Shown: piece by piece, positions 24,801 through 57,452 of the stretch
How positions within the stretch are numbered: the stretch's first letter is position 1
How the letters are laid out: every line of letters starts with the position of its first letter
From: Oculina patagonica
Taxonomy: Eukaryota
NCBI RefSeq assembly: GCF_052425735.1
Contig: NC_135759.1
Span: 45,260,001-45,324,000, forward strand
Reading direction: 5' to 3'
Length of the DNA: 64,000 nucleotides
The notes under the pieces: model-generated
Databases searched by the model: none
Told to the model about the DNA's origin: nothing
The model's input: only the letters and a program-made list of their open reading frames with translations
Made by a program: the position numbers and the translations under genes

Positions 24801-27800
24801 CAGCTGAGTTAGGTGCCAGTGGTTGTTTCTGTCCTGCTCACGTCACGCTTCCTGTCAAAGCATATTTCTTCAGTCTCTCTGACGACAATGCTCCATCTCC
24901 TTATTTGGTGAGCTTCTGCCTAGTGTGTAACAAAACAGCAAGCCGTTCAAGAGTAATAGCTTTGAAATGTAAATGCAGTACATGACATCATCAAAATTCT
25001 GAAACCTAATATCTGTTTTATCCTAGGCATTATAAACCGGGTGGGGGTTTGGTGTCCCCCGGTTCATAATCTACCTTCGGTTTTTTTTTTTAGTTTTTTT
25101 GTCGCAAAAATAGAATTGCTGCTCAGTTAGAAATGACCAGTACGACATATAATTGAAAGAATCAAGTTATATATTATGTGTTTTAAATGTAGAACGAAAA
25201 CAACTCTGATATCTCTATCTACAAAGTCTTCAAAAGCGATCAAAGTGCCTTTGACCTTTAATACTGACGGCCGAGTATCGTATATCGCATGTAACGCTTC
25301 AACATAACGCACTTCTTGTTGAACAGCAACAAAAGGAAATAAAACGCTACTGGGTATACGTCTAAAAGCCTTAGGCTTTCTTGTTAGCTAAAAGAGTGGT
25401 TAAACATTAACCACCCGGTTTTGAGCTACTAAGTAGCTTCTTGTTGAATTAAATTGGTCTTGATATTTAGACCTTCACTGGCTGGGAGGGGGGCTTCTAG
25501 AAAAAAAAATGAGAATTTGTGAAGGGGCAGGGAAGTTTACATTGTACAGTTTGGGGGAGGGAGGCAGGAGATTGAGGGGACTTTTGGGAGGTGACCACTA
25601 GACAAAATATGTGTTGATCCGGCCAGGCGCGTAGCAGAGGTTTTTGGAAGGGTGTTCGTATTTACAGGAATATTTTTTAAGGGGGGGTTATATAATATGA
25701 GCACCGAAGGCGCGAGCTTCTAGGGGGGTCTGGGGGCATGTCCTCCCAGAATATTTTGAAATCTATTTTCAGCCGGAAAATGCTATTTTCAGCATTGTGC
25801 ACGTCAATATTTCAAACTGTCAAAGTGTAAAATAACACGTATTTTTAGTCATAACAACAATATTTCTGGCATTTTGTTAACTTGATACATTCATACATAC
25901 ATACCGGCTTAGTACACTAAACGTTTTACAAAAGCTTGACGTGTGCTGCAAAGGCATCTCAGGGTAAAAGGTTAATTAGCCCCCACCCCCCGGCTCCACC
26001 GTCAATGTACTAAAAGCCGCGTCAAAGCGTCAATATGCACTAAATACACGTATCACCTGGGTCCCCCGAAAATTATTGTAATCACCGCATTTCGTCTATT
26101 GATACTCCATTTATGAAATCCCGAACGCCTGTTAAGGAAATATTTTTTCAACGATGGGATTATTTTAAATACATATAATACTAGGTCACTAGGATCCATT
26201 CTCCTAACAATTTAATACTTTCCCGATACTTTTAGCGTTTTCTTGCTGGGTAATTTAAAAGCTGCAACACTCAAAGTTTGTTTTCCATTCCCCAACTATT
26301 TGCTTAAATCTGAAAATCAACAGTTTGTGTTTTCAGTCCTCCATCATTGACCTCCAAAGGGGGTTCGAAGGAGGCGAGGAGGTACTACCTGTATCTCAGT
26401 ACATGTACACAACGATAACATTCAATTTGTAAATAATTGTTTGCTATGTGAACTGTAGGGCTACATAAGTCTGGATGATCCACAAATCAGTCGGAAAGGC
26501 TACCATGTACCAACCAAGGGAACTGTACAGCTTGTAAGTATGAAGTGTTACTACAATCCACAACAGCACAGAATACAAAATGTATTGTTCACTCATGATC
26601 AGTTCAGTCATCCAGCTTGACTCAACAACAACAATGACAGGAAACATTATTTTTATTTCTTCTAAGCATTAAGTTACGTTTCATTAATTTGACTTCCCAT
26701 AATTAGCAAGCTGCCTATTCGAGGTGAATAATGTAAAATGAGAAACTCTTAGACACTAGATCTGTCTGTCGACGTAGGGAGCTGTCTGCTTAAGAGGGAT
26801 TTAGGGTAACCTGGTTGGACAACCACAATATGGCTTAAGGTCATTGCCCTGAAATAGAACTGAACACAATTTTTTAACCAAACTTCGCCTACTGGTTTAT
26901 TACTTTAAGGAAACTTAAATTTTGAAATAAAAAAGGAGGGTCACCAGATTCGTTTAGGAGCAGGAAGACCTTGTATATTCCATATAATTCCTTTAAAATT
27001 CCTCTGCGAGTACTAGCAAAGTACACGTTTTTAGTGATAATTTATTTTTCAAACACAAGAATTGATCTGTTTTCATTTTACAGAAAGAATTTGATCGCTA
27101 CACCCAGAATATGAGAAAAAATTGATAGGTCACCAGACTCGTTTACGAGAAAGCGACAATTTACTTCTCTCGCGGACTAAGCCACATAGAAAAAAGCCGC
27201 CATTTTGTTTCGCTTATTACCCATAAAATACTGCGCAGTAAGGATGCGCAATGCAATACAGGGCAATGACCTTAACTCACTGTGCTGTAGTACATTTAAG
27301 GCAGCTAAATAAATGTAGTAATGAAATTGCTAGTTTTATTAAGAAATAAGAACTAAGCCACATAGAAAAAAGCCGCCATTTTGTTTCGCTTATTACCCAT
27401 AAAATACTGCGCAGTAAGGATGCGCAATGCAATACAGGGCAATGACCTTAACTCACTGTGCTGTAGTACATTTAAGGCAGCTAAATAAATGTAGTAATGA
27501 AATTGCTAGTTTTATTAAGAAATAAGAACGTTACTCTGGTTAAAAATTTTGTAGTAAAATGTTCGTAAAATATCTACAATGTCCCAACGTTTCGGCTTAA
27601 ACTAAAGCCTTCATCAGGGGAAAGTGATAAGTGAATACAAAAAGCACGTTCTTATATAATATGCAAATCGAGAGCTAATGTTTGTCCCTAAAGGCTAAAT
27701 TTAGAAATTTCTAAATTTAGCCTTTAGGGACAAACATTAGCTCTCGATTTGCATATTATATAAGAACGTGCTTTTTGTATTCACTTATCACTTTCCCCTG

Positions 27801-29826
27801 ATGAAGGCTTTAGTTTAAGCCGAAACGTTGGGACATTGTAGATATTTTACGAACATTTTACTACAAAATTTTTAACCAGAGTAACGTTCTTATTTCTTAA
27901 TGAATCAACCACCTGGTTACAGGTCCATTTTTAAAATCATTGCTAGTTTTATTGCTTCTCTCTCTGGATGGCAATTTTATAGTGTATTAACCTATTTTGT
28001 TTTGGTGTGATTTCAGACTTTGTTCAACCCAAACAAAACTGTTGTTAAAATGTTTGTTGTGCTGTATGACTTCAGTGATATGCCTCCTAAAGCACAGACA
28101 TTTCTACGGCAAAGAACATTTTCTGTATGGAGACATGCTTGTCAATCAGATGAGGTACTGAGGTGTACTCCTTTATAATTTGCCTGTTTGTAAGACCCTA
28201 CACTGCACTAATGTTTTGTTGTCATCTTAATGTTTTTTTGTTTCCTTTTCTGACCTTTTTCTGACCTTTTACTGCAATCCACAGTTTCATTGCAATATAC
28301 CAGTATACCATTGTCAGTCTGCTACAGGCCTTTTAGTTTTAGCATTTATTTAATTATGTTGTTATACAATTAAATTAACATAAAACCTGGATTTGTGATT
28401 AACGAATTTATCAATAGTAGCAGTAGATATAATTTAAATATAATTGTTCGTTATTGTTGTCATTGCAGGGTCAAAATTCCTTTCATTATTTAATTCATTT
28501 GAGGTAAGATTTCTTACAAAACCTTCTACTACAGTGGAGCCTCAATTTAGGAACCTAGAGCTATATAATGAAGTCCTTAACAGTATAACGAACAATGTTC
28601 TTTGTCCCAGGAATAATAAAATATAAAATGAACCCTGATATAACAAAACCTTGTTATAGCAAACAAAAGAAATTATTTATTTACCCTAATCCTTGCTGTG
28701 AGGCCTCATGCATCCCAGGGCGTGACAAGGAAGCGTGATTCCTTTTGTTGTTTTTTTTCCCTAAACCTCAGTTCTTTGGTTGGGTTGTGAACTCAGATAC
28801 ATGGGATATCACCTAATTGATGCAGGTCTTTCTATAGATCCCTTAATTCAGTCTCACACAGCGTTTGTGCTAAATGCATATAAACATTTATTTTATAAAA
28901 TTTACATGTTGAATATATATGGGTCATATTGAGGTGCAGTGACCTAATGGTTAGACGTTCCGAGTTTGAGCTCTGGCAGGGATCTTGGGCGTGTTCTTGG
29001 GCAAGACACTTTACTGTCATAGTATACCATTCTCACTCATTAATTATGCCGCTCACTGTCCGGCGTCAAAAATTCGCCCGGACTTCCCAGGTTGTGTATC
29101 TCTTTCGAAAGGCGCCGAAACTAAAGGGATCTTTAAATACGACGATTGTGCATGTGTGGTGATTAAGCATTACCTAACGCAAGTATCTATAAACAAACAG
29201 GGTTATGTAATCCAAGCACTTCTGAATTCTGCGTCATAATTATGAATGAGAATAGTGCCTCTCTCCACCCAGGTGTATAAATGGGTACTGGCAAAATAAT
29301 GCTGCCCAGGGGGGAGGGGGGTACCCTGCAATAGACTAGCACCCCATCCAGGGGGGAGTAGAAATATTCCTAGCTGCTTAATGCTATTGAAACCGGGATA
29401 AGCTCTGGCAGTATGCGTCACTTGGCTTGAGGCCGCACAATATATATTATGTATGTTGTGGTTCAATTTTTTAACCCTTGGTACAATCTGACCTGGATAT
29501 AAAATTTCCTTTGTTTTATATTCATTAATTATCATACATGACCATACACCAGAACAAAGAAAAAATTGTACCAAGGGTAAATTGAACCACAGCATACATA
29601 TTTACATGAATATAAATGTATTCAGCCATAGAAACATGCAATGTTAACAAGGGCTTTACCACAAAGTGTTTATTTCTGTTTCAGATTTGTTAGTTCCAAG
29701 TCTGGAAGACTGTATCTTCACACTGACATCAGAGTGATATTTGCTCGTCAGCCTCCTGACCTCCCTAGTGGAGTCAAATATTGTACCGTGACTGATGGGC
29801 CTACAGAACCTCGATACACACTTTAA
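15884..29826 (+). CDS. ATOSA: Atos homologue (FAM214 family; DUF4210 plus C-terminal chromosome-segregation domain), 14 exons, one apparent frameshift near 21009
   Basis: Exons 15884-15899, 18238-18428, 18875-19017, 20063-20191, 20978-21570, 21741-21899, 22956-23017, 23339-23435, 24394-24438, 24794-24907, 26459-26533, 28017-28154, 28469-28503, 29685-29826. Motifs MKP, LIVEGRTP, LLERW, FSQLSAWL, VSVQSLPR, SLLGNFEESVLNGR, GFTAELGASG, TLFNPNKTVVKMFVV, YLIHLRF and SKSGRLYLH match ATOSA/FAM214A as I recall it. Confidence 0.92.
16770..17600. mobile_element. MITE with 16-bp TIR and 5-bp TSD
   Basis: TAATC|caggcccgtagggtgg ... ccaccctacgggcctg|TAATC. Confidence 0.8.
19400..20000 (-). mobile_element. 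Degraded RTE-clade LINE 3' fragment in ATOS intron 3
   Basis: Frameshifted pieces read MKDSHIPKDLLYG, LKALGINVNTWEAVAADRVAW and ASAFT-x-TH-CGRGCHSCIGL, typical of an RTE ORF C-terminus. Confidence 0.75.
19497..19615 (-). mobile_element. 119-bp solo-LTR-like insertion inside the RTE fragment
   Basis: GAGGC|TGTAATGTTT ... AAACATGACA|GAGGC: TG..CA ends, 9/10 terminal inverted match, 5-bp TSD, AATAAA on the minus strand. Confidence 0.75.
21936..22885. mobile_element. TIR element filling ATOS intron 6, with a short (CCCCTAAA)-like array
   Basis: agtgcagaatgca (21936-21948) is inverted at 22873-22885. ctaaacccctaaagccctaaacccctaaacccctaaa lies at 21981-22017. Confidence 0.55.
23072..23255. mobile_element. 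Degraded Penelope-like inverted-repeat insertion with decayed hammerhead motifs
   Basis: Arms 23072-23124 and ~23147-23205 are inverted copies. CTGAAGA-stem-GAAA-like core remnants are present, followed by a unique 3' tail. Confidence 0.6.
23923..24102. mobile_element. Tc1/mariner-type MITE (TA TSD); degraded relative at ~28531-28660
   Basis: TA|cagtggaaccccgatataacgat ... atcgttatatcggggttccactg|TA. Confidence 0.85.
26839..27271. mobile_element. MITE with TTAA TSD (Kolobok/piggyBac-type)
   Basis: TTAA|ggtcattgccctg ... cagggcaatgacc|TTAA. Confidence 0.75.
27176..27529 (+). repeat. Exact 176-bp tandem duplication
   Basis: actaagccacataga...aagaaataaga at 27176-27351 repeats at 27352-27527. 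Confidence 0.9.
27582..27621 (-). ncRNA. Minimal hammerhead ribozyme (inverted copy)
   Basis: Exact reverse complement of 27794-27833. Confidence 0.75.
27794..27833 (+). ncRNA. Minimal type I hammerhead ribozyme (Penelope type)
   Basis: TCCC-CTGATGA-A-GGCTT(tagttt)AAGCC-GAAA-CGTT-GGGA: 4-bp stem I, intact core, 5-bp stem II, stem III reduced to palindromic ACGT, GUU cleavage triplet. Confidence 0.78.
28925..29420 (+). mobile_element. tRNA-derived SINE with CORE-like domain, interrupted by a ~230-bp TIR element (~29027-29256)
   Basis: A-box-like gacctaatggttag, then gtgttcttgggcaagacactttact / gtgcctctctccacccaggtgtataaatgggtac. Homologous to 38576-38850. The insert is bounded by attctcactcattaattatg / cataattatgaatgagaat. 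Confidence 0.75.
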
Positions 29827-49800: not shown

Positions 49801-49883
49801 CTAAAATTTAAGGGAGAAATGTGTAGCATTTTTTTTTGTTAAACGAACAATATTCTTGTCGCAAGGTCTGAAAAGTTTATAAG

Positions 49884-49920
49884 CGAAGCTTTCGACTGTA
49901 TCGCACAGTCTTCATCAGCG
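49884..49920 (-). ncRNA. Minimal hammerhead ribozyme 40 nt after the GIY-YIG stop codon
   Basis: CG-CTGATGA-A-GACTGT(gcgat)ACAGTC-GAAA-GCTT-CG: perfect 6-bp stem II, palindromic AGCT in place of stem III, stem I only 2 bp. Confidence 0.7.
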
Positions 49921-50239
49921 ATTGAAATTAGCTCACGTTGTCTCGTGAATGCAAATTGTTTAATCACGTGACCACAGATGGTCAAAAATGGCGGGAAGAT
50001 CATAGCCCCCTTCTCTGTTCAGCGTTGGGCGTTGACGTCTGATATGGATGGCTTCCTTGATTTTCCTTTTGACATCTACCGACTCTTTATCAAGAATCTT
50101 GACTCCTTCCCAGTCGATCTGGTGGTTGGCCTGAGACTGGTGTTCCTGGATCGCAGATGTTGTTTGTCTCTGATGTTCACCCAGTCGCTTCTCCAGAGTT
50201 CTCGCTGTCTCGCCAATGTAATGTTCACCGCAATCATTG

Positions 50240-56441: not shown

Positions 56442-57452
56442 ACTTGCATGTGATGTCGTATACCAGTCTTATACCGGTATCGTATGCCGGTCTTTTTTGT
56501 GGTCGGTGTCTTGTCTTTTGGATGGACTAAGATTGACCTCAGCGTGTTGTAATGCTTGTGGTATGTGTGGATGTCTTGTGCTCTGAAGACTGTGCGATAC
56601 AGTCGAAAGCTTCGCTTATAAAACTTTTCAGACCTTACGACAAGAATATTGTTCGTTTATTTTAACACCAAGGTCAAGAATGAGCGTACATAGTCATTTT
56701 TTTTTTGGTTGTTTTTAAAAAGTGCAAAAGCAAGTTCGATGGCCTTTTGTATCGCATTTTGCATCAGAAAATACACTGATTAACAATTAGATAGCCTGCG
56801 TAGCAAGTATTCCCGTACGATTGATGAGTTTTCCGTATTTTGTAATTTTCGCAATTTCGCACGGCCGAAATGCGGGAACGCTTGCTACATAGGCTAACTA
56901 GACAACAAGCTCAAATTTTCTACGAGGAAATAGTATACGAGCCGCAGCCGAGTTGATTATCACTCATAGAAAACGAGGGCGAGTAGTCTACTTGTTTTAG
57001 TAGACACTAAACAATTTGAAGTATCGTTAAACCAAAAATCAAGAAACAAATTCCCTTTCAAAGCCGGGCAACGTGTGCGTGATCGTGTTCTTACAACGAA
57101 TGAACGACAATCACAGAACCAATGAGATTCGCAGAGAAGTTGGTTATAGGCATAACCACAGTGAAAAACTGATACTGGATCTGTTGCAGAGCTTGATCAG
57201 AAAAATACTAGAGATAAAAAGCAATAACTTGATCCTTACGGCATGGAAAAGGACAACAAACACGTGATTAAATAAACAGTGCACACATATCTCGTTTGTT
57301 TTTCCTCTCCTTACTGTAAGTATAAGTTTGTAATTTTAGACTCCATTGTAGCGTAGGTCTAGAATATTAGTTCGATCTTTTGCTAGAGTCATCGCCTCTG
57401 ACTGCCTCCCTTCCCTCCCCTCCCTACTCTTCCTACCTATCTACCAGTGGCA

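What the first reader, a model, noticed from the sequence alone, without database searches (positions are those of the whole stretch)
27502..27953. Perfect 388-bp palindrome carrying a hammerhead ribozyme on each strand: a self-masking Penelope-type insertion in an ATOS intron
Seen: 194-bp arms with no spacer and no mismatch found (27514-27901), a 37-nt unique tail, and a 15-bp TSD. Each arm has an intact CUGAUGA..GAAA core with stem III reduced to palindromic ACGU. Known: Penelope-like elements carry minimal hammerheads thought to cleave as dimers, often have inverted termini, and leave a ~30-40-nt 3' tail. Inference: this ORF-less unit arose by fold-back during integration, since each arm ends in the self-complementary decamer CTAAATTTAG next to the centre. 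In the host pre-mRNA the antisense arm is transcribed first and would pair with the ribozyme, blocking cleavage while making 194 bp of dsRNA ~115 nt upstream of exon 12. It could belong to a small non-autonomous ribozyme retroelement (retrozyme-like) family.
Basis: partly seen in the sequence, partly recalled or inferred. Interest (0 to 1): 0.85.

Follow-up and report, generated by a model that had tools for sequence, protein, structure and literature searches.

The report
Truncated head-to-head Penelope retrotransposon insertion
The perfect 388-bp palindrome is real, but it is an ordinary by-product of how Penelope-like retrotransposons insert: a short forward copy plus a mirror-image copy of the 3' end of a young, autonomous coral element, and one of many such palindromes in this genome.

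Summary
A perfect 388-bp palindrome lies at 27514-27901, followed by a 37-nt tail, with a 15-bp target-site duplication. Each strand carries a minimal hammerhead motif.

The arm is not an ORF-less retrozyme-like unit. It is the last 11 codons plus the 3'UTR of an autonomous Penelope-like element of about 2.55 kb. That element encodes an 813-aa RT + GIY-YIG ORF and has at least 40 copies at 96-100% identity. The genome is very probably the coral Oculina patagonica.

In 11 other insertions of the family that I checked, a forward, tail-bearing, 5'-truncated copy sits next to an inverted, tail-less copy inside one TSD. This is the published PLE architecture. It fits the in-vitro result that the PLE protein extends both target strands from two start sites one "tail" apart. 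This copy is simply the case where both copies stop at the same template position.

Eight more short hammerhead palindromes from this and other families were checked. The genome holds 1,577 matches to the hammerhead pattern I searched, against 19 for the control.

Contigs from two other coded organisms show the empty site.

"Self-masking" is physically plausible but untested, and nothing suggests it is selected.

Two side results are worth noting. One sister insertion ends at the predicted ribozyme cleavage site. A perfect 176-bp flank duplication abuts this copy.

The parts
27502..27516 (.). Left copy of the target-site duplication (ATTGCTAGTTTTATT).
   Evidence: A contig of run X3 joins 27325 to 27939 with these 15 nt shared, which is the empty site.
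27514..27707 (-). Inverted, tail-less copy of the element's 3' end (family reference positions about 1694 down to 1499).
27582..27621 (-). Minimal hammerhead motif of the inverted copy, the mirror image of 27794-27833.
   Evidence: core at 27590-27617, minus strand; perfect palindrome
27708..27901 (+). Forward 5'-truncated copy of the element. 27708-27740 are the last 11 codons and the TAG stop of the RT-EN ORF; the rest is 3'UTR.
   Evidence: It differs from reference copy L002 at one base, 27889 C.
27757..27763 (+). TATATAA box, about 30 nt upstream of the position where sister palindrome L066 has its arm ends. Possible pLTR promoter (inference only).
   Evidence: sequence; L066 arm ends
27794..27833 (+). 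Minimal type-I hammerhead motif: helix I UCCC/GGGA, CUGAUGA, bulged A, helix II GGCUU/AAGCC, GAAA, then CG-U-U. The predicted cut is after U27829.
   Evidence: L065 arm ends
27902..27938 (+). 37-nt tail, present only on the forward copy.
27939..27953 (.). Right copy of the target-site duplication.
27176..27527 (+). Two perfect 176-bp tandem units. Each ends with the 15-bp TSD plus the first 11-13 nt of the inverted copy.
   Evidence: A 129-nt contig of run X1 (27251-27379, 0 mismatches) crosses the unit junction.
28016..28146 (+). Host exon (ATOS-like), 62 nt downstream of the right TSD.

Best explanation
This is one retrotransposition event of a young, autonomous, canonical (C-terminal endonuclease) Penelope-like element. 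The element's protein nicked both target strands 12-15 bp apart. One 3' end primed reverse transcription at the distal start site and gave the forward copy with its 37-nt tail. The other 3' end primed at the proximal start site about 35 nt further in and gave the inverted, tail-less copy. Both cDNAs stopped at the same template position, 33 nt before the ORF stop codon, and were joined head to head, which makes a spacer-less perfect palindrome. The hammerhead on each strand is simply the family's 3'UTR (pLTR) ribozyme copied twice. The intronic hairpin is a by-product, not a device. What is shown: the anatomy, membership of the family, formation in a single event (one TSD, an empty site in other samples), and the recurrent architecture. 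What is inferred: the order of priming and the way the two copies were joined.
For: Family. The arm plus tail has at least 41 matches at 95-100% identity (206 candidates).

Connection to the ORF. In 29 of 29 other loci the arm continues upstream into one conserved sequence. That sequence is the end of an ORF with RVT_1 and GIY-YIG hits. A full 813-aa ORF scores RVT_1 30.9 bits against a cut-off of 29.6, and GIY-YIG 19.6 bits. There are 1,045 homologues at E<=1e-10, from corals, ticks, fish and amphioxus among others.

Architecture. Of 20 5'-truncated copies, 17 have an adjacent inverted copy with a variable junction. In 10 of 10 copies where the outer end could be read (this copy included) it lies at reference 1694-1698, so the tail is missing there; L065 and L066 show the same. 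TSDs of 6-15 bp flank the whole composite.

Orientation. In the 66-site census about 26 pairs are all head to head and none tail to tail.

Shared origin of the arms. The private base 27889 C is mirrored in the other arm, so both arms come from one template or one from the other.

Recent insertion. Empty-site contigs appear in runs X3 and X9.

Literature. PMC8557442 describes the adjacent inverted 5'-truncated copy and the one-sided 30-40-bp tail. PMC11167929 reports that a PLE protein cleaves and extends both strands, with two RT start sites that delimit the tail. PMC4209133 already noted dual minimal hammerheads 100-700 bp apart on opposite strands.
Against: The centre of the palindrome was not checked with independent reads. 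Only short-read contigs were available, and they stop at the centre. The GIY-YIG Pfam score is below the gathering cut-off. Twin priming does not by itself explain why both copies stop at the same nucleotide. A snap-back of the first cDNA, followed by cutting at the tail boundary, would give the same product. The 176-bp flank duplication is not predicted by the simple model.
Confidence: 0.9

Rival explanations
1. The palindrome is a member of a small, ORF-less, retrozyme-like hammerhead retroelement family.
For: The copy has no ORF and carries a hammerhead. A 2026 preprint (10.64898/2026.07.22.740005) argues that animal retrozymes derive from PLE pLTRs. In other families of this genome, short palindromes of fixed size exist: L067 and L071 both show 247-bp spacing between TSD copies.
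Against: All 29 other loci continue from the arm into the RT-EN ORF. Truncation points vary from copy to copy. Tandem spacing is about 2.55 kb, not arm length. The arm differs from the autonomous copies by a single base.
Confidence: 0.03
2. The inverted arm is an assembly or fold-back-read artefact.
For: Perfect spacer-less palindromes are a known artefact of long-read libraries. PLE structures are known to upset assemblies (PMC8557442). No read spanning the centre was seen.
Against: Unique flanks lie on both sides with a precise TSD, and other samples carry a matching empty site. An X1 contig contains the flank followed by the first 13 nt of the inverted arm. Nineteen other loci show the same architecture.
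Confidence: 0.04
3. It is a foldback or MITE-type DNA transposon with terminal inverted repeats.
For: It has long inverted arms, a TSD and no ORF.
Against: The arms are the coding end and 3'UTR of a retroelement. The termini are asymmetric, with a tail at one end only. TSD length varies from 6 to 15 bp within the family.
Confidence: 0.01
4. The hairpin has been co-opted. It would mask the ribozyme in the ATOS pre-mRNA and feed dsRNA pathways (editing, small RNAs) or modulate splicing of the next exon.
For: A 194-bp perfect RNA duplex is predicted. It lies in the sense orientation, 62-115 nt upstream of an exon.
Against: The insertion is absent from contigs of two other coded organisms and is essentially undiverged from active copies, so there has been no time for selection. 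Such palindromes are frequent and scattered. Single minimal hammerheads are reported inactive alone (PMC4209133).
Confidence: 0.05

Closest known systems
Canonical EN+ Penelope-like elements (Penelope/Poseidon, Neptune, Nematis), as described by Evgen'ev & Arkhipova 2005 and Craig et al. 2021 (PMC8557442)
   Same: A single ORF with RT followed by a C-terminal GIY-YIG carrying a CCHH motif; heavy 5' truncation; an adjacent inverted 5'-truncated copy; a 30-40-bp tail at one end only; partial tandems; a hammerhead in the pLTR; variable TSDs.
   Different: The clade within PLEs was not determined. This copy is an extreme truncation, keeping 231 nt of about 2,550. Its two copies end at the same nucleotide, so no spacer is left.
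Poseidon of Anolis carolinensis (PAc), in-vitro system of Frangieh et al. 2024 (PMC11167929)
   Same: In that system both target strands are extended, and two adjacent internal RT start sites delimit the tail. The genomic copies here show exactly one tailed and one tail-less arm per insertion.
   Different: In vitro the two strands showed no difference in start site, whereas here each insertion uses the two sites asymmetrically. In PAc the hammerhead overlaps the ORF start; here it lies 58-100 nt after the stop codon.
Minimal PLE hammerheads (min-HHR) of Cervera & De la Pena 2014 (PMC4209133)
   Same: CUGAUGA and GAAA boxes, a bulged base between positions 9 and 10.1, a G10.1-C11.1 pair, palindromic 15.2-16.2 (ACGU), and a 4-bp helix I. 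Dual motifs on opposite strands 100-700 bp apart were already reported there.
   Different: Helix II has 5 bp, against the 6-8 bp typical there. Cleavage was not assayed here. The only indirect evidence is a sister insertion whose arms end at the predicted cut.
L1 twin priming (Ostertag & Kazazian 2001; cited from my own knowledge)
   Same: Both target 3' ends prime on the element RNA, giving an inverted 5' part next to a direct 3' part inside one TSD.
   Different: In L1 the inverted part comes from a region upstream of the direct part. Here the two parts duplicate the same 3' region, and the second primer always starts at one fixed internal site.

Membership tests
Penelope-like element (EN+), insertion of | Reverse transcriptase domain in the family's ORF | tested here: met
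   RVT_1 scores 30.9 bits against a cut-off of 29.6 on the 813-aa ORF at L063:1251-3689(-). The YVDD motif is visible in the translation.
Penelope-like element (EN+), insertion of | C-terminal GIY-YIG endonuclease with a CCHH motif | tested here: met
   The GIY-YIG Pfam hit follows the RT, at E 7e-4 to 1e-3 and 19.6-20.3 bits, below the 22.6 cut-off. The motifs ..IYSIPCQVC..YIGET.. and ..HCFHSGH are readable. Some homologues carry PF01541. This is a weak pass.
Penelope-like element (EN+), insertion of | 30-40-bp tail present at one end only | tested here: met
   The tail is 37 nt (27902-27938). The inverted partner lacks it in 10 of 10 copies where the outer end could be read (this copy included) and in L065 and L066.
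Penelope-like element (EN+), insertion of | Adjacent inverted 5'-truncated copy within one TSD | tested here: met
Penelope-like element (EN+), insertion of | Partial tandems forming pLTRs | tested here: met
   Met for the family: in L010 and L062 the tail is followed directly by the element's 5' end, and same-strand copies lie about 2.55 kb apart. Not present in this particular copy.
Penelope-like element (EN+), insertion of | RT groups with PLE/TERT in a phylogeny; assignment to a clade | not tested
Minimal PLE hammerhead (min-HHR) | Catalytic boxes CUGAUGA and GAAA in type-I order | tested here: met
   The 32-mer is exact in 85 sites and has one mismatch in 11 more.
Minimal PLE hammerhead (min-HHR) | Unpaired base between positions 9 and 10.1, and a G10.1-C11.1 pair | tested here: met
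   The sequence reads CUGAUGA-A-GGCUU..AAGCC-GAAA. The pattern requiring this layout gives 1,577 genomic matches against 19 for the reversed control.
Minimal PLE hammerhead (min-HHR) | Palindromic 15.2-16.2 (dimer-forming helix III) and an H at position 17 | tested here: met
   GAAA-CG-U-U gives the tetramer ACGU and the site GUU. Another family in the window has AGCU.
Minimal PLE hammerhead (min-HHR) | Helices supported by compensatory changes | tested here: met
   A relative at 77% identity changes U-A to G-C in helix II. Across families helix II differs but stays complementary, for example GGGAC/GUCCC against GAGAC/GUCUC. This was read by eye, not scored statistically.
Minimal PLE hammerhead (min-HHR) | Self-cleavage at the predicted site | not testable with these tools
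   Indirect only. In L065 the inverted arm ends exactly at the first base after the predicted cut, and the forward arm within a 2-nt ambiguity. The L026 junction is compatible with the same end.
Rfam hammerhead families (RF00163, RF00008 and others) | Covariance-model score at or above the gathering threshold | tested here: not met
   No hit in the 2.5-kb scan. The best result is 10.6 bits against 48.5. This is expected for motifs lacking helix III.
Animal non-LTR retrozyme | Short (about 170-400 nt) head-to-tail tandem units without an ORF | tested here: not met
   The two units here are inverted, not tandem. The arm is contiguous with the RT-EN ORF in 29 of 29 other loci.
Foldback / MITE DNA transposon | Inverted repeats reaching both termini and a TSD of fixed length | tested here: not met
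   The tail is one-sided, and TSDs range from 6 to 15 bp.

The most novel reading that the evidence does not exclude
The centres of symmetric head-to-head PLE palindromes may record the 5' ends of the template RNAs, because both target strands would be extended to the end of one RNA. On that reading three things follow. L065 shows that a minimal PLE hammerhead cleaves in vivo and that the cleaved RNA can serve as template. L066, and palindromes of other families, mark a transcription start about 7-12 nt upstream of the CUGAUGA box, about 30 nt after a TATA box. And genomes rich in such palindromes become a natural record of the poorly understood PLE integration cycle.
Probability: 0.35. Interest if true: 0.55.

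Novelty: new member of a known kind. Interest (0 to 1): 0.3.

Why it matters
For the host, this is a very recent insertion that is absent from contigs of two other coded organisms. It places a 194-bp perfect hairpin in an intron, 62-115 nt from an exon of an ATOS-like gene. That could be a local source of dsRNA and of DNA fragility, but nothing suggests a function. For transposon biology, the family is a clean, apparently active coral PLE with near-identical copies and intact 810-818-aa ORFs. Its insertions give in-vivo support for the two-start-site, both-strand priming model that has so far been shown only in vitro for a lizard element. One sister copy also hints that the ribozyme really does cut in vivo.

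Tried and rejected
- **Rfam scans.** Scans for a hammerhead gave no significant hit. The miRNA and thermometer hits are simply the long hairpin and were rejected.
- **Read support for the palindrome centre.** The only runs offered were Logan contigs, which break at the centre, and the single read-laying run is used. No RNA evidence could be obtained.
- **k-mer census for 5' ends at the cleavage site.** I compared copy numbers of successive 32-mers. Divergence and A/T-run length variation confound the counts: 96, 66 and 41. I therefore used only site-by-site comparison, which singled out L065 and the inverted copy of L026.
- **Symmetry test.** Symmetric junctions look enriched (5 of 17 with an offset of 45 nt or less; permutation p about 0.003). 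L065 and L066 were picked because they are short, which biases the test, so I treat it as suggestive only.
- **Shared junction at reference 265.** I first read many copies as sharing a fold-back there. This was an artefact of using L002, which is itself a 1.4-kb-arm palindrome, as the reference.
- **Pfam on the 49-aa host exon.** This found nothing.
Full report
**1. The observation**

The region reads as described.
- Extending from the centre 27707|27708, the first non-complementary pair is 27513/27902. The perfect palindrome is therefore 27514-27901, with 194-nt arms, no spacer and 31% GC.
- The 15-mer ATTGCTAGTTTTATT flanks the unit at 27502 and 27939.
- The right arm is followed by 37 unique nt, 27902-27938.
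- CTGATGA..CGAAA occurs once on each strand inside the arms. The window has three such matches in all against 0.27 expected.
- As RNA the unit folds into a single hairpin of -350.5 kcal/mol.

27176-27351 and 27352-27527 are identical 176-bp tandem units that include the left TSD and the first 11-13 nt of the left arm.

**2. What the arm is**

The right arm plus tail is a repeat in the window's own genome, with at least 41 matches at 95-100% identity and 206 candidates. The genome has 529 Mb. It is very probably Oculina patagonica, for two reasons: a homologue named for that species lies on a contig of exactly the length of contig C2, and another is 98% identical.

In all 29 other loci fetched, the sequence upstream of the arm is not a mirror image. 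It is one conserved sequence. That sequence is the end of a 441-aa open frame with RVT_1 and GIY-YIG matches.

Longer copies give a forward unit of about 2,550-2,564 nt and an 813-aa ORF. That ORF scores RVT_1 30.9 bits, above the cut-off, and GIY-YIG 19.6 bits, just below it. Open frames of 810-832 aa occur in at least four copies. The ORF has over a thousand homologues in corals, anemones, ticks, sea urchins, fish and amphioxus.

The window's arm therefore consists of the last 11 codons and the stop (27708-27740) plus the 3'UTR. It differs from a reference copy at one base, 27889. It is a 5'-truncated copy of an autonomous Penelope-like element, not a member of an ORF-less family.

**3. The architecture is the family's rule**

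I mapped each copy on a reference whose 3' end is position 1730.
- Of 20 truncated copies, 17 consist of a forward part starting at a copy-specific position and, directly upstream, an inverted part. The two meet with 0-10 nt of overlap or 2-65 nt of filler.
- In all 10 copies where it could be read (this copy included), the outer end of the inverted part lies at reference 1694-1698. That is about 33 nt short of the 3' end, so the tail is missing there. TSDs of 6-15 bp flank the composite.
- A census of the 32-mer just 3' of the ribozyme found 66 sites. About 26 pairs are all head to head and none is tail to tail.
- Same-strand neighbours lie about 2.55 kb apart. In L010 and L062 the tail runs straight into the element's 5' end, which is the partial tandem (pLTR) arrangement.

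[quoted passage not shown] It also matches the biochemistry of a lizard PLE. That protein cleaves and extends both target strands and starts reverse transcription at two adjacent internal sites, and the tail is the stretch between them (PMC11167929).

The window's copy is the special case in which the forward and inverted parts both stop at reference 1499-1501. The private base 27889 C is mirrored in the left arm and in the upstream duplicated unit. All three were therefore copied from one template, or from each other.

**4. It is a real and recent insertion**

Short-read contigs from two other coded organisms show the empty site.
- X3 joins 27325 to 27939 with 15 shared nt.
- X9 joins 27482 to 27939 with a small variant.

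A 129-nt contig of X1 (27251-27379, no mismatch) contains the flank, then the first 13 nt of the inverted arm, then the restart of the flank. This supports both the left junction and the tandem duplication. X1 may be the sample the assembly came from, and only 26 nt of that contig lie beyond the junction. The centre of the palindrome itself could not be checked independently.

**5. The hammerhead**

The motif reads, in order:
- UCCC (helix I, 5' strand)
- CUGAUGA
- A (bulged)
- GGCUU, a 6-nt loop, AAGCC (helix II)
- GAAA
- CG, U, U (stem III, with the predicted cut after the second U)
- GGGA (helix I, 3' strand)

It shows the features that Cervera & De la Pena list as emergent properties of PLE minimal hammerheads: a base between positions 9 and 10.1, a G10.1-C11.1 pair, palindromic 15.2-16.2, and a short helix I (PMC4209133). 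Helix II has 5 bp, shorter than the 6-8 bp described there.

Rfam's models do not recognise it. That is expected, because helix III is absent.

Further support:
- The 32-mer is exact at 85 sites in the genome. It is more widely conserved than the flanking 3'UTR: 96 sites against 66 and 41.
- A relative at 77% identity keeps helix II through a U-A to G-C change, although its core carries an A-to-U change.
- A pattern that fixes only the boxes, one free base after CUGAUGA (the bulge position), the 10.1/11.1 pair and an S-S dinucleotide at 15.2-16.2 finds 1,577 sites against 19 for the reversed control. These sites have many different, internally complementary helix II sequences.

The same paper already noted dual minimal hammerheads 100-700 bp apart on opposite strands.

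**6. Other short palindromes**

Eight more loci were fetched.
- L066 (same family) has 114-nt arms, a 4-nt spacer, a TSD of about 15 bp, and the tail on one side. Its arms start at reference 1580 and 1583, about 30 nt after a TATATAA box.
- L065 (same family) has 73-nt arms. The inverted arm ends exactly at the G that follows the predicted cut (GUU|GGGAC). The forward arm ends there within a 2-nt ambiguity. The arms are separated by 179 nt of filler, and the last 89 nt of that filler copy the upstream flank. The TSD is 12 bp.
- Six loci of other hammerhead families were fetched. Five are palindromes with 55-107-nt arms, 1-9-nt spacers and TSD-like direct repeats; in L067, which I checked, about 37 extra nt lie on one side only. 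The sixth, L069, is looser: 42-nt arms at 93% with 44 nt between them, and no flanking direct repeat was found.
- Among the first 100 motif sites listed on contig C1, 22 form 11 same-family head-to-head pairs less than 1 kb apart. The only two close pairs in the opposite arrangement (+ then -) join different families.

The finding is therefore one of many.

**7. How it most likely arose and what it does**

Shown: a single event, one tail, a fixed outer end of the inverted copy, and a shared template.

Inferred: both nicked target strands primed on the element RNA, one at each start site. In this copy both cDNAs reached the same 5' end of a broken or short template and were joined. The centre AATT is self-complementary, so 4-nt pairing of two identical cDNA ends is possible, but a blunt join would give the same product.

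A snap-back of the first cDNA onto itself, with later cutting at the tail boundary, cannot be excluded. It would suit the 1-9-nt spacers of other copies. It does not explain the majority of copies, which are asymmetric.

It is absent from the centres of the other palindromes, so it is not required.

In the host pre-mRNA the hairpin would certainly form, and the ribozyme would be buried in it. Single minimal hammerheads are reported inactive without a partner or the element's protein (PMC4209133, PMC11167929). The insertion is also too young for selection to have acted. "Self-masking" is therefore a description, not a function.

**8. The 176-bp duplication**

The unit boundary shares only AC. 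There are two readings.
- An abortive first priming produced 13 nt of inverted copy, followed by a template switch back into nearby target DNA and a second start. L065 also carries a copy of upstream flank inside the insertion, which favours an integration-linked origin.
- A later microhomology-mediated tandem duplication arose next to a fragile palindrome.

I cannot decide between them.

**9. Verdict**

The Penelope assignment and the single-event fold-back are supported. The retrozyme-like and functional readings are not.

It is a new member (a coral family, apparently undescribed) of a well-described kind. The modest added value lies in the clean in-vivo footprint of two-site, two-strand priming, and in one sister copy whose ends coincide with the predicted ribozyme cut.

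Noticed in passing
window 27176-27527: Perfect 176-bp tandem duplication spanning the left junction. Each unit ends with the 15-bp TSD plus the first 11-13 nt of the inverted arm, and the unit boundary shares only AC. An X1 short-read contig crosses the boundary.
   Followed up: partly
window 26900-27460: A very high-copy repeat (summed contig depth about 1e5, against about 30-100 for unique sequence). It ends at 27275 and again at 27451. The PLE inserted about 50 nt beyond its end.
   Followed up: no
L065:114-494 (G000:C2:21392263-21392643): Sister insertion whose inverted arm ends exactly at the base after the predicted hammerhead cut, and whose forward arm ends within 2 nt of it. 179 nt of filler lie between the arms, and the last 89 nt of the filler copy the upstream flank. 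The TSD is 12 bp.
   Followed up: partly
L066:142-431 (G000:C3:3958291-3958580): Second short palindrome of the same family: 114-nt arms, 4-nt spacer, TSD of about 15 bp. The arms share several private substitutions, including one that breaks a helix II pair. The arm ends lie about 30 nt after a TATATAA box.
   Followed up: partly
L067, L068, L070, L071, L072 (contig C1): Short hammerhead palindromes of other families (arms 55-107 nt, spacers 1-9 nt, TSD-like direct repeats at the flanks). L067 and L071 have identical 247-bp spacing between TSD copies and an (ACT)n run at the centre. These could be fixed-length, non-autonomous units.
   Followed up: partly
I confirmed a hammerhead motif at 49890-49918 (-) with a different helix II and AGCU at helix III, a 44-nt inverted repeat (49871-49914 / 56584-56627), and 300-bp perfect direct repeats at 50238 and 56062.
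   Followed up: partly
L008 / L009 (G000:C4:13945065-13951522): Two copies facing each other, both tail-bearing, whose inverted identity (99% over 2,453 bp) continues about 770 bp into the flanking DNA. This looks like a segmental inverted duplication or an assembly problem, not a product of insertion.
   Followed up: partly
window 27933-27943 compared with L010 and L062: The TSD begins with ATTGC, the same 5 nt that follow the tail where copies are in tandem. This could be microhomology between the nicked target and a read-through template RNA, or it could be chance.
   Followed up: no
L002 / L053 (G000:C10:12536440-12541300): A giant near-perfect palindrome of the same family. The arms are at least 1.4 kb, offset by 42 nt, and each carries a 441-aa open frame.
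   Followed up: partly
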